Made by a program: the position numbers and the translations under genes
NCBI RefSeq assembly: GCF_902459465.1
Contig: NC_047066.1
Span: 3,100,001-3,164,000 of the forward strand
Direction of reading: 5' to 3'
DNA length: 64,000 nt
From: Asterias rubens
Lineage: Eukaryota
Notes under the pieces: generated by a model
What the model saw: the letters and a program-made list of their open reading frames with translations, nothing else
What the model was told of the DNA's origin: nothing
The model's database searches: none
Shown here: piece after piece, positions 60,546 to 64,000 of the stretch
Numbering within the stretch: position 1 is the first letter of the stretch
Layout of the letters: every line of letters begins with the position of its first letter

Positions 60546-61577
60546 TTTGAGTTTACGATGGATTTGAGTTTTGCGTCTACTCAAGAGCGCCCGCAAAACT
60601 CAATCGCAAATTATCAAGACTTGCGACGGGCTTGCGACGGGCTTGCGATGGATTTCAAAACGTCCGACTTTAGTGAAATCAGTTTTTAAAATCCGTCGCA
60701 AACTTGCGACTGATTCCGTGATTTACGATGGATATTGGCTGTTTGCGATTGATTTAAAGTTTAGTGAAATCGGCCCCTGACATCGCCTTGCAGCTGTCTT
60801 CCAATGAATGCCCAAGTTGCCCCTGTGTAAAGGGCATATAGTTAAGTCCACTGATGCATGGGGCTCAAATATGCCAACTCGTGCTAAAATCAACTCAAAT
60901 TCAGATCCAAGTCCACTTGTTGGTATTTGTACCAGCTTTAAATGTGCCTTGATGTCTCTCCTACATGTGTTTAGTGCAACAACTGTGTGGTCATCAACAG
61001 GCGTTCTAGGGTGGCTTCCACATGCAGAACCAGTAATTACATTGAATGAGCAAGCCATGTCAATGTCCTAAAAACAAGATAAGGAAAAACAACACAATGT
61101 TAGCTTCAATTTGCTGATTATTAAGTAAATAGTTTCATTTCAGGCCTACACATTCAGTCATTTATAAATATGCAGTAGAATAACATGTAGCGCTATATAG
61201 TTACCTAAATGAGATATCCCTTTTTTGTAAAAATGAGTGAAAAAGTGGTGGCACCATACGGAAAGTTATCCGGCAATTCTTCACATGGTGTATTGTGGGG
61301 TTGCAGAACTTAATTTTTAAAATTGTTTACAAACATGGCAGGGGCGTGGCAGGGCATGCTCATTTTGTTTTTTTGGTTTTCCGAATGCGCTAAGTGTTAT
61401 AATAATTGAATGTGTTATATTATATTATTATAATATAATTTTTGTTTTGAAAGTTATTGTTACTGTATTTTTGTTTTATATTCAGTTTCAGCATTAAATA
61501 AATTGCAACATTGAAAACAAAAATTAATTAATGTCAAAAACAAACATTCTCAGTGCAACAATTGGTATCACACGACT

Positions 61578-61688
61578 TAGCCCACCTTGTTGAGCTGTTA
61601 ATGGCTCCGCTTTTAACATCGGTCTCATCATGACAGTGATAAGACCGATGTTAAAAGCGGAGCCATAACAGCTCAACAAGGTGGGCTA
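61578..61688. mobile_element. 111-bp foldback mini-element with 9-bp TSD
   Basis: Arms of about 52 bp (TAGCCCACCTTGTTGAGCTGTT...) with a short loop; TSD CACACGACT (61569-77, 61689-97). The paralogous site near 11550 has a single CACACGACT. Confidence 0.92.
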
Positions 61689-61752
61689 CACACGACTCCA
61701 CTACTGACTCATGATTATGACAGAACCCAATCATTCATAGTTAAATACTCAC

Positions 61753-62031
61753 GTGAGCTGTTTCATTTCCTACATCTTCCGACTCGTACACCAAACCCAA
61801 TGAACGTTGTGTGCTGTACAATGAGTACAACATATTTTGTTGTCTTTCTTCAATTTGACTTTGTATGGACATTGCACCGGCATTTGGGTCCCCGTATTGG
61901 TCATTTTCCTCCTCTTCATAACCAAAATCGCCATATTTATTCCCTCCGGATCGAGATGATCCAGACGGCACAAAAACGAAGTCTTTATCATCATCATCGA
62001 AAGGGTTTTTCGGACGTTTTCCGTAAGACAT
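61753..62031 (-). pseudogene. SNAP29: Duplicated SNAP29 exon 1 (93 codons); exons 2-3 do not follow
   Basis: MSYGKRPKNPF...MLYSLYSTQRSLGLVYESEDVGNETAH|gtgagt, with the donor intact. Homology to intron 1 stops at about 61201 and no copy of exons 2-3 was seen. Confidence 0.8.
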
Positions 62032-62697
62032 CTTGTTCTGTGGGTGTTTTTGTCAATAAATGACGTCACTCTCACTCTGGTAGTTTTCGCTGGTCAATAA
62101 CAATAGCTTTAGTTATGCAACAAAAGAATGTCGGGAACCAGTTATGTCCACAACCCACATCTTTTTTGAGGTCAAACATGGCTCTTTCAGTCAATGTATG
62201 TTAATTTGTAAAGGTTACTCGAAACAATACAATTTTAGTTTATATTAAGTTCTGAAAATGGTTGATTACATAAAAATTATATTTTTAAATGTATTTTCTC
62301 AGTTATTTAGTATAAAATCAGACTGTAGGCAATGTTTAAGATAATAAATTTGGAGCCGAAAGGAAAATAATAACAAACGTCATTTTGCTATCTTGCTGAC
62401 CGAAGTCGGTAACGAATAACGTCTGCATTTTTAAAGGTGGTATGATATTTTTTAACGAGAAAGGCGTGCTGAAAACAAGCATAATGCTATGAAAAGGGGG
62501 TTCTCATACTGGAGGGACTGCAGGAAGTGAGATTCCAGCTCTTTCTATTCATGCAATTCGTGATTGAACGGGGCGGAGAATCTCTCTCGTTGTGATTACG
62601 TACGTTCATGACGATCAGCTGTTGTGACCTTCGTTCGACTTTCGTCGTCGCTGAGTTTGGCTTGCTTCACGGCTTGTGACCCGGCCGGGGTGTAGGG

Positions 62698-62780
62698 ATG
62701 GCTTACCAGCAGTCCCCAAGCAAACGGCCCGCTTCCTCGTCTCGGGCTGCTGGGGTTTCGGTGAGGGCTCAGCCCGTTAG
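62698..62780 (+). CDS. BCAS3: Duplicated BCAS3 exon 1 (start of a second BCAS3 copy running out of the window)
   Basis: [29 protein letters not shown]|gtgaga. Same 83-nt length and donor as 12560-12642, with one amino-acid change (G>A). Confidence 0.8.
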
Positions 62781-64000
62781 GTGAGATTCAGATGAACCAG
62801 TGAATGGATATTGATAACTAGCTGATTGAACTGTTGACAAGCAAGTGTGTTGTGACTTTTGTGTTGTGATAATTTATTTAGCAAAATTATAAAATATGAT
62901 TACGTACTTTCTACTACAAACAATTGAAACATCAAATGTGACAACATGTTTAAAAATTAAATGAAACTTTGGGAAAATTTCCGTATCATGCCACCACTTT
63001 TTAAATTCGTATAAAATAAATGTGTGTCTAATTTACTGAAAGTGAAAGGAGGCATTTCTTTTGACAAAAAGGAGTGAAAAAGTAGTGGCAGGATATGGAA
63101 AATTTTCCGAAGCTACTTGCCTTGGCTCGTTTGTTTGGAATCTAAGTTAGAAACCCACTTTACTTCACCCATTTACTTCATTCTTGCTCTGTTGGTGTAT
63201 TTGTTTTTAAATTTTTTTCTCTGCATTTTGTTGTATTCCTTATAATGCGCAGTTTATAGAGCAATATAAATGTCCGTATTATTATTAGTTTACTTTCACT
63301 GTAAGTAAGTAAGTTAGTTTACTCCCTGTGGTTTTAAATAATTGAAAAAACAACTAAAGTTAAAGTCACCTGGAAGTGGTATTTTTTCAAAATAAAGCTT
63401 TTGTCACTAATATATGTGTTTTGATGAGTGGAATGTGAATAAACAGTTAACTAAGATTTTAAAAAATCAGTTCTTATGTTAAGAGTAGACCCCGACCCGA
63501 GAGGGCGCTGTTCGTGACGTCAATCGAGGCAGACTTTGCCTGTAATGCGTAGAGTAAACACAATTGCAAAGTACATGTACGGACCAAGTGGTGAGTTTGT
63601 ACGTTTAACAAAAAAAAAATTGTTTTTTTCCGGCAATGCCGACCAGGTGTATTACTGCTGAATGCAGAAAAACACTTTTTGAAATGTACCAACTCACGAC
63701 TTGGACGTACATGTACTTTGCACGTGTGTTTACTATACGCATTGCAGGCAAAGTCTGCCTCGATTGACGTCACAAAAGGGGTAGGCGGAGTCAGCCCCCC
63801 AAACAACTTTATATATTTTTTAAACATATAAATCGTGACAAACAGTTACTAAAAAAATTGTTTTATTGTTCGTAAGCATATACTCTTATGTTTGAAAGAA
63901 AAAAAAATCTATTTCCAGGTGACTTTAAGCACTTCGTCATTGTGAAAGTATTAAAACTTAACTTCCTTTTTAATTTTTTTATATTAAAAACAAACTTATT

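What the first reader, a model, noticed from the sequence alone, without database searches (positions are those of the whole stretch)
61201..64000. Duplicated SNAP29/BCAS3 bidirectional promoter: possible reciprocal splitting of a head-to-head gene pair
Seen: 11186-13876 recurs about 50 kb downstream in the same orientation, with both first exons and both donors intact. In the left copy SNAP29 is complete while BCAS3 looks damaged and 3'-less. In the right copy SNAP29 is cut after exon 1 while BCAS3 starts afresh. Inference: a tandem duplication may have left one functional gene per promoter copy, uncoupling two autophagy-related genes that shared a promoter. Alternative: two haplotypes of a highly heterozygous animal were joined in the assembly.
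Basis: partly seen in the sequence, partly recalled or inferred. Interest (0 to 1): 0.75.

Follow-up and report, generated by a model that had tools for sequence, protein, structure and literature searches.

The report
Starfish SNAP29/BCAS3 promoter duplicated, genes split
In the common starfish, about 25 kb holding the shared promoter, the first exon of SNAP29 and the first 16 exons of BCAS3 has been copied into BCAS3's own intron, so each promoter copy now serves one intact gene; it is a tidy lineage-specific example of a known process.

Summary
The repeat is real: 11186-13876 recurs at 61201-64000 in direct orientation, 96.7% identical. The window is Asterias rubens LR699096.1, 3.10-3.164 Mb.

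The right copy runs on beyond the window into a complete 19-exon BCAS3 (XP_033627030). The left copy keeps complete SNAP29. Its BCAS3 part:
- has only exons 1-16;
- has lost exon 11 and the invariant arginine of the L[HY]RG lipid-binding motif;
- evolves near-neutrally (46 replacement vs 20 silent changes, against 3 vs 7 in the right copy);
- ends in a Gypsy-borne zinc-finger exon.

A. amurensis, Patiria and Acanthaster each have a single LLC1-SNAP29-BCAS3 arrangement. The junction at 61201-61203 is a 3-bp microhomology joining unique intron sequence to the middle of a MITE. A haplotype join is therefore unlikely (about 10%).

A. amurensis BCAS3 already uses the same zinc-finger exon as an alternative 3' end. 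So the duplication also split two isoforms between two genes.

Not shown:
- reads bridging the junction (a MITE blocks short reads);
- whether the duplication is fixed in the species;
- promoter-specific expression.

Unexplained: a 4-kb segment in which only the left copy is highly diverged, and left-copy exons that diverge faster than left-copy introns.

Two other notes of this scan on this same window cover the left-copy damage and the zinc-finger ORF.

The parts
9596..11887 (-). Complete SNAP29 gene, 279 aa; exons 9596-9762, 10294-10696, 11618-11887
   Evidence: Exon model reconstructed with GT-AG sites and a 279-aa product. It matches the called 279-aa gene. Best natural PDB matches are SNAP29 chains 7bv6 and 4wy4 for both SNARE motifs. 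An N-terminal NPF motif is visible in the translation.
11186..35726 (.). Left copy of the duplicated segment (S1-L): part of SNAP29 intron 1, SNAP29 exon 1, the promoter, and BCAS3 exons 1-16 minus exon 11
   Evidence: Collinear with the right copy from 61201 to 87764 in window-equivalent coordinates. Collinear with A. amurensis throughout.
11888..12559 (.). Left bidirectional promoter interval between the two ATGs
   Evidence: 672 bp. Nearly identical in the left copy, the right copy and A. amurensis.
12560..35714 (+). BCAS3-left, 15 coding exons of the 998-aa model XP_033627026 (P0001)
   Evidence: Exact exon map, all introns GT-AG; exon 11 (144 nt) absent and exon 12 27 nt shorter. The BCAS3_WD40 profile is covered only at positions 1-383 of 479. 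The L[HY]RG arginine is lost. Left branch: 46 replacement vs 20 silent changes.
31139..35160 (.). Segment in which only the left copy is highly diverged
   Evidence: 98-209 left-only differences per kb against 1-9 right-only, while right copy and A. amurensis differ by about 3%. In local blocks the left copy differs by 3-20%. No transition bias.
35727..61200 (.). Rest of the ancestral BCAS3 intron 16 (M), present only behind the left copy. It holds a Gypsy element (LTRs about 38565-39294 and 45319-45983), a 14.4-kb transposon block found only in A. rubens (46335-60771), and a conserved end (60772-61200)
   Evidence: Collinear with A. amurensis intron 16, L003 36320-47509. RVT_1 and DDE_Tnp_4 Pfam hits. 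LTR pair 95.4% identical.
44294..45158 (+). Terminal exon of BCAS3-left: a C2H2 zinc-finger ORF inside the Gypsy element
   Evidence: Acceptor ...TTTTTCAG, in frame with exon 16. A weak zf-C2H2 hit. The same exon ends A. amurensis isoform X1, P0151. The ORF is open in both species with in-frame indels only, and replacement/silent ratio is 1.36.
61201..61203 (.). Duplication junction J1: 3-bp microhomology TTA
   Evidence: Homology to A. amurensis intron 16 ends at 61203. Homology to left 11186 onward, inside a MITE of SNAP29 intron 1, begins at 61201.
61201..64000 (.). Start of the right copy (S1-R): half a MITE, 552 bp of SNAP29 intron 1, SNAP29 exon 1', the promoter, BCAS3 exon 1 and the start of intron 1
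   Evidence: The copy continues to window-equivalent 87764 in L001.
61753..62031 (-). SNAP29 exon 1 relic, with no exon 2 or 3 behind it
   Evidence: ATG and donor are intact. It carries a derived in-frame 9-bp insertion plus 2 substitutions relative to the left copy and A. amurensis. No right-type exon reads in RNA runs X16 and X36.
62032..62697 (.). Right bidirectional promoter interval
   Evidence: 666 bp, intact.
62698..62780 (+). Exon 1 of the complete BCAS3-right (XP_033627030, 916 aa, 19 coding exons reaching window-equivalent 98488)
   Evidence: 100% tblastn matches and the exon map. Full BCAS3_WD40 (1-478 of 479) and BCAS3 C-terminal domain.

Best explanation
This is a real partial duplication specific to the A. 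rubens lineage. In the ancestor, as in A. amurensis today, SNAP29 and BCAS3 lay head to head with about 0.67 kb between their start codons. BCAS3 had two alternative 3' ends: the canonical exons 17-19, and a zinc-finger exon carried by a Gypsy element in intron 16.

A copy of the segment running from the middle of SNAP29 intron 1 to 14 nt past BCAS3 exon 16 (about 25 kb) was placed in direct orientation further down intron 16. It was joined by a 3-bp microhomology, the kind of junction left by end-joining or by replicative template switching. This is equivalent to a tandem duplication followed by loss of the second copy of the intron.

Both breakpoints lie inside genes, so the outcome follows automatically:
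- The upstream promoter copy keeps intact SNAP29 plus a BCAS3 that can end only in the zinc-finger exon.
- The downstream promoter copy keeps a dead-end SNAP29 exon 1 plus the only BCAS3 that reaches exons 17-19.

Shown: the structure, the single-copy outgroups, the junction, intact canonical BCAS3 on the right, and relaxed constraint with loss of key residues on the left.

Inferred: that each promoter is now kept for one gene, that the duplication is common in the species, and whether the left BCAS3-zinc-finger gene has a function or is decaying.
For: - Repeat and collinearity.
- No gap.
- Junction with TTA microhomology between unique, amurensis-conserved intron sequence and the inside of a MITE.
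- A. amurensis is single-copy, with LLC1-SNAP29-BCAS3 and the intron-16 block in the ancestral place. Patiria and Acanthaster are also single-copy.
- The right gene is complete.
- The left branch has 46 replacement vs 20 silent changes, against 7 vs 38 on the right and amurensis branches together (Fisher p=1e-8).
- Exon 11 is lost and the WD40 profile is truncated.
- The arginine equivalent to human R401 is lost. [quoted passage not shown]
- The SNAP29 relic carries a derived 9-bp insertion.
- In run X1, left-type and right-type contigs stand at 155 vs 79 depth with the flank at 161, which fits three doses of the segment against two of the flank.
- Right-type sequence appears in an independent RNA run: X16 record 12.
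- The zinc-finger isoform is annotated in both species.
Against: - No read or contig bridges 61201. The high-copy MITE at 61172-61338 swamps short reads, and the X1 contig over the end of the intron block leaves the reference at 61156.
- The depth argument rests on a single 126-bp bubble in a run whose identity is coded.
- In RNA run X16 only the left-type BCAS3 exon 1 is seen, in a 3274-nt spliced contig. No right-type exon 1 was seen, so activity of the right promoter towards BCAS3 is not shown.
- Left-right divergence is very uneven: about 1% over most of the segment, 6.7% at 30-31 kb, and far more in 31.1-35.2 kb on the left branch alone. One recent event does not explain this.
- The right intron 16 keeps only 14 nt at its 5' end and about 22 nt at its 3' end of the ancestral intron, which a random deletion would rarely do.
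Confidence: 0.7

Rival explanations
1. Assembly artefact. Two haplotypes of a heterozygous animal (or a chimeric read) were joined, so the genome has one SNAP29/BCAS3 locus, and 'left' and 'right' are alleles.
For: Over 11-30 kb the two copies differ by about 1% plus indels, which is a level seen between alleles. No read bridges the junction. Other notes on this assembly suspect uncollapsed haplotypes. False duplications of this type are documented in long-read assemblies (PMC9516828).
Against: There is no gap or contig end at the junction. The junction is a 3-bp microhomology in non-repeated sequence on one side and mid-MITE on the other, which is not a long shared repeat. The two copies differ in content: the left has no exons 17-19 and keeps the 25-kb intron block, while the right has no SNAP29 exons 2-3 and a 1.1-kb intron 16. 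As an allele, the left BCAS3 would be a long-decayed null of a gene under strong constraint (replacement/silent ratio 0.04-0.13 elsewhere). X1 depth is 155:79, not 1:1, and the sum exceeds the flank.
Confidence: 0.1
2. The duplication is real but old, predating the A. rubens / A. amurensis split. Most of the unit has since been homogenised by gene conversion. A. amurensis returned to one copy by unequal crossing-over between the two units. The 31.1-35.2 kb segment shows the true age.
For: The mosaic of left-right divergence: 1%, 2-3% in a star-like pattern at 24-26 kb, 6.7% at 30-31 kb, and 3-20% in the diverged segment, where the right copy groups with A. amurensis. Left-copy exons are more diverged than left-copy introns (1.62% vs 0.69%, p=0.001), as in tandem genes whose introns are homogenised. 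Unequal crossing-over between tandem units restores a scar-free single copy.
Against: The intron block behind the left copy is as close to the A. amurensis block as orthologous sequence elsewhere (93-98%), not as far as the diverged segment. Several extra events are needed. No second copy or relic was seen in the A. amurensis, Patiria or Acanthaster loci.
Confidence: 0.2
3. The duplication is real but is a copy-number variant still segregating in the population (heterozygous or rare), not a fixed feature of the species. Any division of labour between the promoter copies would then be incidental.
For: X1 k-mer depths fit three doses of the segment against two of the flank, which is a heterozygous state. 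19 kb of 99%-identical direct repeats 50 kb apart should recombine often. Another young, probably polymorphic partial duplication was reported in this assembly.
Against: The left BCAS3 has accumulated about 66 coding changes, an exon loss and a diverged 4-kb segment, which needs a long time as a redundant copy. Right-type sequence is also present in the independent run X16.
Confidence: 0.3

Closest known systems
Partial tandem (intragenic) duplications with microhomology junctions, as produced by end-joining or replicative template switching (FoSTeS/MMBIR) (from general knowledge)
   Same: Direct orientation, both breakpoints inside genes, a 3-bp microhomology, a truncated upstream copy and an intact downstream copy, and an associated deletion with filler sequence at the second junction.
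   Different: The unit here straddles a divergent promoter, so two genes are truncated reciprocally. The mechanism is inferred from one junction only.
Division of alternative isoforms between duplicates, as in fish mitfa/mitfb (duplication-degeneration-complementation, Force et al. 1999) (from general knowledge)
   Same: An ancestral gene with two alternative 3' ends (A. amurensis isoform X1 vs X5) is replaced by two genes, each able to make only one of them.
   Different: The division was immediate and structural, set by the breakpoints, not by gradual complementary mutations. One of the two ends is a transposon-derived exon with no evidence of purifying selection (replacement/silent ratio 1.36).
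False haplotype duplications in genome assemblies (PMC9516828)
   Same: Two nearby copies about 1-3% apart in a heterozygous animal assembled from long reads.
   Different: No gap, unequal gene content in the two copies, a microhomology junction, and a decayed reading frame in one copy.
Conserved bidirectional (head-to-head) gene pairs
   Same: SNAP29 and BCAS3 start codons are 656-712 bp apart and divergent in four starfish from two orders.
   Different: Such pairs are usually inherited or lost as a unit. Here the pair is duplicated and each copy keeps one intact member.

Membership tests
Genuine segmental/tandem duplication | Two collinear copies in direct orientation on one gap-free sequence | tested here: met
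Genuine segmental/tandem duplication | A breakpoint junction with a biological signature, and a single copy in an outgroup | tested here: met
   TTA microhomology at 61201-61203. Single copy in A. amurensis, Patiria and Acanthaster.
Genuine segmental/tandem duplication | Reads spanning the junction, and raised depth over the copies | tested here: inconclusive
A MITE blocks bridging by short reads. One bubble at 155 vs 79 with the flank at 161 suggests three doses.
False haplotype duplication | Copies abut a gap or contig end, carry the same genes, and each stands at half depth | tested here: not met
   No N runs. Unequal gene content. Depth 2:1, not 1:1, though that rests on weak data.
SNAP29 (Qbc-SNARE) | Two SNARE motifs most similar to SNAP29, and an N-terminal NPF motif | tested here: met
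   7bv6_C/D and 4wy4_C/D are the best natural PDB matches. NPF is present in the exon 1 translation.
BCAS3, right copy | Full BCAS3_WD40 propeller, BCAS3 C-terminal domain, and the L[HY]RG arginine | tested here: met
   PF21034 positions 1-478 of 479 and PF12490. LYRG is present.
BCAS3, left copy | Full BCAS3_WD40 propeller, the L[HY]RG arginine, and the C-terminal exons | tested here: not met
   PF21034 covered only at 1-383 of 479. LYTG instead of LYRG. Exons 11 and 17-19 are absent.
Subfunctionalisation of duplicates | Complementary loss of parts in the two copies | tested here: met
   The left copy lacks the canonical 3' end. The right copy lacks SNAP29 exons 2-3 and the zinc-finger exon.
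Subfunctionalisation of duplicates | Both copies maintained by selection and expressed in a divided way | tested here: inconclusive
   The left reading frame and all its splice sites are intact, but the replacement/silent ratio is 0.69 and the chance of no stop codon arising is 0.11. RNA shows left-type exon 1 only.
Bidirectional promoter pair | Divergent starts less than 1 kb apart, conserved across species | tested here: met
   672 bp in A. rubens. The same arrangement in A. amurensis, Patiria and Acanthaster.
Bidirectional promoter pair | One regulatory region drives both genes | not testable with these tools
   This needs reporter or deletion assays.

The most novel reading that the evidence does not exclude
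The left copy may not be a dying pseudogene. It may be a young gene that inherited the BCAS3-zinc-finger isoform alone and is being remodelled: the lipid-binding arginine is lost, a propeller blade is removed in frame, and its exons change twice as fast as its introns, while gene conversion keeps its introns close to the canonical copy. If so, the duplication created a new gene and split an ancient promoter-sharing pair at the same time.
Probability: 0.2. Interest if true: 0.6.

Novelty: new member of a known kind. Interest (0 to 1): 0.42.

Why it matters
It gives a dated, outgroup-anchored example of one partial duplication doing two things at once. It separated a head-to-head gene pair that has been conserved across starfish orders. 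It also turned two alternative 3' ends of a gene into two genes. That makes two things testable: whether shared promoters constrain their gene pairs, and how fast a released gene copy changes. It is also a practical warning for annotation. The database holds two 'BCAS3-like' proteins for A. rubens, and only one of them is a canonical BCAS3.

Tried and rejected
- Bridging the junction with public reads failed. The MITE at 61172-61338 is high-copy and no bridging record was listed.
- An exact search for the junction 25-mer in metagenome contigs found nothing.
- Exact look-ups of the right-type SNAP29 exon-1 ORF and of the ORF next to the junction found no independent contigs.
- A search with the left-type exon 13 ORF found no relatives.
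- Look-ups of non-longest isoforms failed.
- Hypermutation or editing as the cause of the diverged segment was rejected, because the substitution spectrum is unbiased (59 transitions of 117).
- CpG or base composition as the cause of the excess change in left-copy exons was rejected, because both GC and AT sites are about twice as changed.
- Run X24 as evidence about A. rubens was rejected. Its size (79,905 million letters) matches the 79.91 Gb of A. amurensis survey data in PMC11090083, so its single-copy look only agrees with the A. amurensis assembly.
- The sea urchin and crinoid loci do not show the tight gene pair.
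Full report
**What and where.** The window has no N runs. It is Asterias rubens chromosome record LR699096.1, bases 3,100,001-3,164,000. This follows from the loci fetched for the two annotated proteins and from their names.

11550-13876 matches 61689-64000 at 96.7%, and 11186-11558 matches 61201-61577 at 90.3%. Both matches are direct, offset 50,015 bp, and the second reaches the window end.

**Genes.** SNAP29 lies on the minus strand at 9596-11887: three exons, 279 aa. 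Both of its SNARE motifs match SNAP29 chains best among natural PDB entries.

BCAS3 starts 672 bp away on the plus strand. The left BCAS3 is the RefSeq model XP_033627026 (P0001, 998 aa). It has fifteen BCAS3 exons from 12560 to 35714, all with GT-AG introns, followed by a terminal exon at 44294-45158. That exon is the zinc-finger ORF of a Gypsy element.

**Beyond the window.** The second A. rubens protein, XP_033627030 (P0267, 916 aa), gave locus L001, which overlaps the window exactly (L001 1-11303 = 52698-64000) and extends it to 108,491. The right copy is a complete 19-exon BCAS3. It includes exon 11, which is missing on the left, and exons 17-19. Its BCAS3_WD40 and C-terminal domains are complete.

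Left-right homology runs from 11186/61201 to 35726/87764, which is 14 nt past exon 16, and stops there.

**Outgroups.**
- A. amurensis has one LLC1 - SNAP29(-) - BCAS3(+) locus with no internal repeat.
- Its intron 16 is collinear with the 25 kb that follows the left copy (35727-61200), Gypsy element included, up to exactly 61203. It then continues with different sequence towards exon 17.
- So A. rubens has SNAP29 - copy - intron block - copy - exons 17-19, where A. amurensis has SNAP29 - copy - intron block - exons 17-19.
- Patiria and Acanthaster have the same single-copy trio, with 656-712 bp between the coding starts.
- The sea urchin has only a distant SNAP29 exon-1-like hit 5 kb upstream. 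The crinoid has none.

**Junction.** At 61201-61203 the unique end of the intron block (98% identical to A. amurensis) meets the interior of a MITE that is complete in the left SNAP29 intron 1 (11120-11256). The two sides share only TTA. This is a typical biological breakpoint and an unlikely place for an assembler to join two haplotypes.

**State of the copies.** I assigned coding changes to branches, using A. amurensis as the third sequence.

| Branch | Replacement | Silent | Ratio |
|---|---|---|---|
| Left copy | 46 | 20 | about 0.7 |
| Right copy | 3 | 7 | about 0.13 |
| A. amurensis | 4 | 31 | about 0.04 |

Left against the other two branches together gives Fisher p=1e-8.

The left copy lacks exon 11, so its WD40 profile stops at position 383 of 479. 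It has LYTG where nine BCAS3 proteins, from scallop to vertebrates, have L[HY]RG. [quoted passage not shown]

The right SNAP29 exon 1 has a derived in-frame 9-bp insertion. A haplotype carrying the left BCAS3 as its only allele would be a long-decayed null of a strongly constrained gene. That is the main argument against allelism.

**A further twist.** A. amurensis isoform X1 (P0151, 1084 aa) also joins exon 16 to the same Gypsy zinc-finger exon. This alternative 3' end therefore predates the species split. After the duplication only the left copy can make it, and only the right copy can make the canonical end.

The zinc-finger exon shows no purifying selection (replacement/silent ratio 1.36). 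Even so, it is open in both species, and all of its indels are in frame.

The left reading frame is intact over 711 codons. The chance of that after 66 random substitutions is 0.11. The two deletions are also in frame. This is suggestive, not decisive.

**Reads.**
- Run X1 (DNA contigs) holds both sequence types at 62224-62349, at depth 155 (left type) and 79 (right type), with the flank at 161. This fits three doses against two. It is one bubble only, and X1's contig over the end of the intron block leaves the reference at 61156.
- Run X16 is RNA: its contigs stop at the exon 1 donors. It is nearly identical to the reference. It shows left-type SNAP29 exon 1 (depth 160), a 3274-nt spliced contig that begins with left-type BCAS3 exon 1 (depth 41), and a right-type intron fragment (depth 2.6).
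- Run X24 is probably the A. amurensis survey data, and it looks single-copy.
- No record bridges the junction, because the MITE is high-copy.

**Unexplained.**
- Left-right substitution divergence is about 1% over 11-30 kb, against about 4.5% to A. amurensis. It is star-like at 24-26 kb and 6.7% at 30-31 kb.
- In 31139-35160 only the left copy is far from both others, by 3-20% in alignable blocks, with an unbiased substitution spectrum.
- Left-copy exons upstream of that segment carry 1.62% left-specific changes, against 0.69% in left-copy non-coding sequence (p=0.001). Base composition and CpG content do not explain this.
- The right intron 16 keeps only 14 nt and about 22 nt of the ancestral intron, around 1.1 kb of unrelated sequence.
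- Three explanations remain open: an old duplication with gene conversion, a conversion from a third copy, or selection on the left protein.

**Verdict.** The event is an ordinary kind of event, a lineage-specific partial duplication, in an instructive configuration. Interest is moderate.

Noticed in passing
window 44294-45158; L003 44874-45827: The Gypsy-borne C2H2 ORF is used as an alternative terminal exon of BCAS3 in the annotations of both A. rubens (P0001) and A. amurensis (isoform X1). The ORF is open in both, all seven indels are in frame, and the replacement/silent ratio is 1.36.
   Followed up: partly
window 31139-35160: A 4-kb segment in which only the left copy is strongly diverged, with 98-209 left-only differences per kb, while the right copy and A. 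amurensis differ by about 3%. The boundaries are sharp and the substitution spectrum is unbiased.
   Followed up: partly
window 12560-30847 (left BCAS3 exons 1-10): Left-specific substitutions are 2.4 times denser in exons than in the surrounding non-coding sequence (p=0.001). They come in clusters, for example five within 47 bp at 29365-29411.
   Followed up: partly
L001 29311-30528 (window-equivalent 82008-83225): The right intron 11 holds a 187-bp x 4 tandem array (97% identical), plus 203 bp x 1.9, that repeats the last 72 nt of exon 11 together with its donor site. A. amurensis has a single copy of this sequence and the left copy has none.
   Followed up: partly
L001 35054-36199 (window-equivalent 87751-88895): The right intron 16 is 1.1 kb, against 13.2 kb in A. 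amurensis. It shares only the first 14 nt and the last 22 nt or so with it. The interior is unrelated, repeat-like sequence.
   Followed up: partly
window 59444-60405: A 962-bp high-copy insertion present in the reference is skipped by contigs of X1 and X16 and by one X24 read, so it is a transposon insertion polymorphism.
   Followed up: no
window 61577-61697: A 120-bp palindromic MITE-like insertion is present only in the right copy's remnant of SNAP29 intron 1.
   Followed up: no
window 12642/35714 and 66001 (window-equivalent): Exon 1 and exon 16 both end in codon phase 2. A read-through transcript that spliced left exon 16 to right exon 2 would therefore stay in frame and encode a protein with two propellers.
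   Followed up: no
window 46335-60771: A 14.4-kb block absent from A. amurensis intron 16. It includes a PIF/Harbinger-type transposase ORF (58828-59448, DDE_Tnp_4).
   Followed up: no
window 38565-39294 and 45319-45983: The LTR pair of the Gypsy element is 95.4% identical over 476 bp. This fits an insertion older than the A. rubens / A. amurensis split.
   Followed up: no
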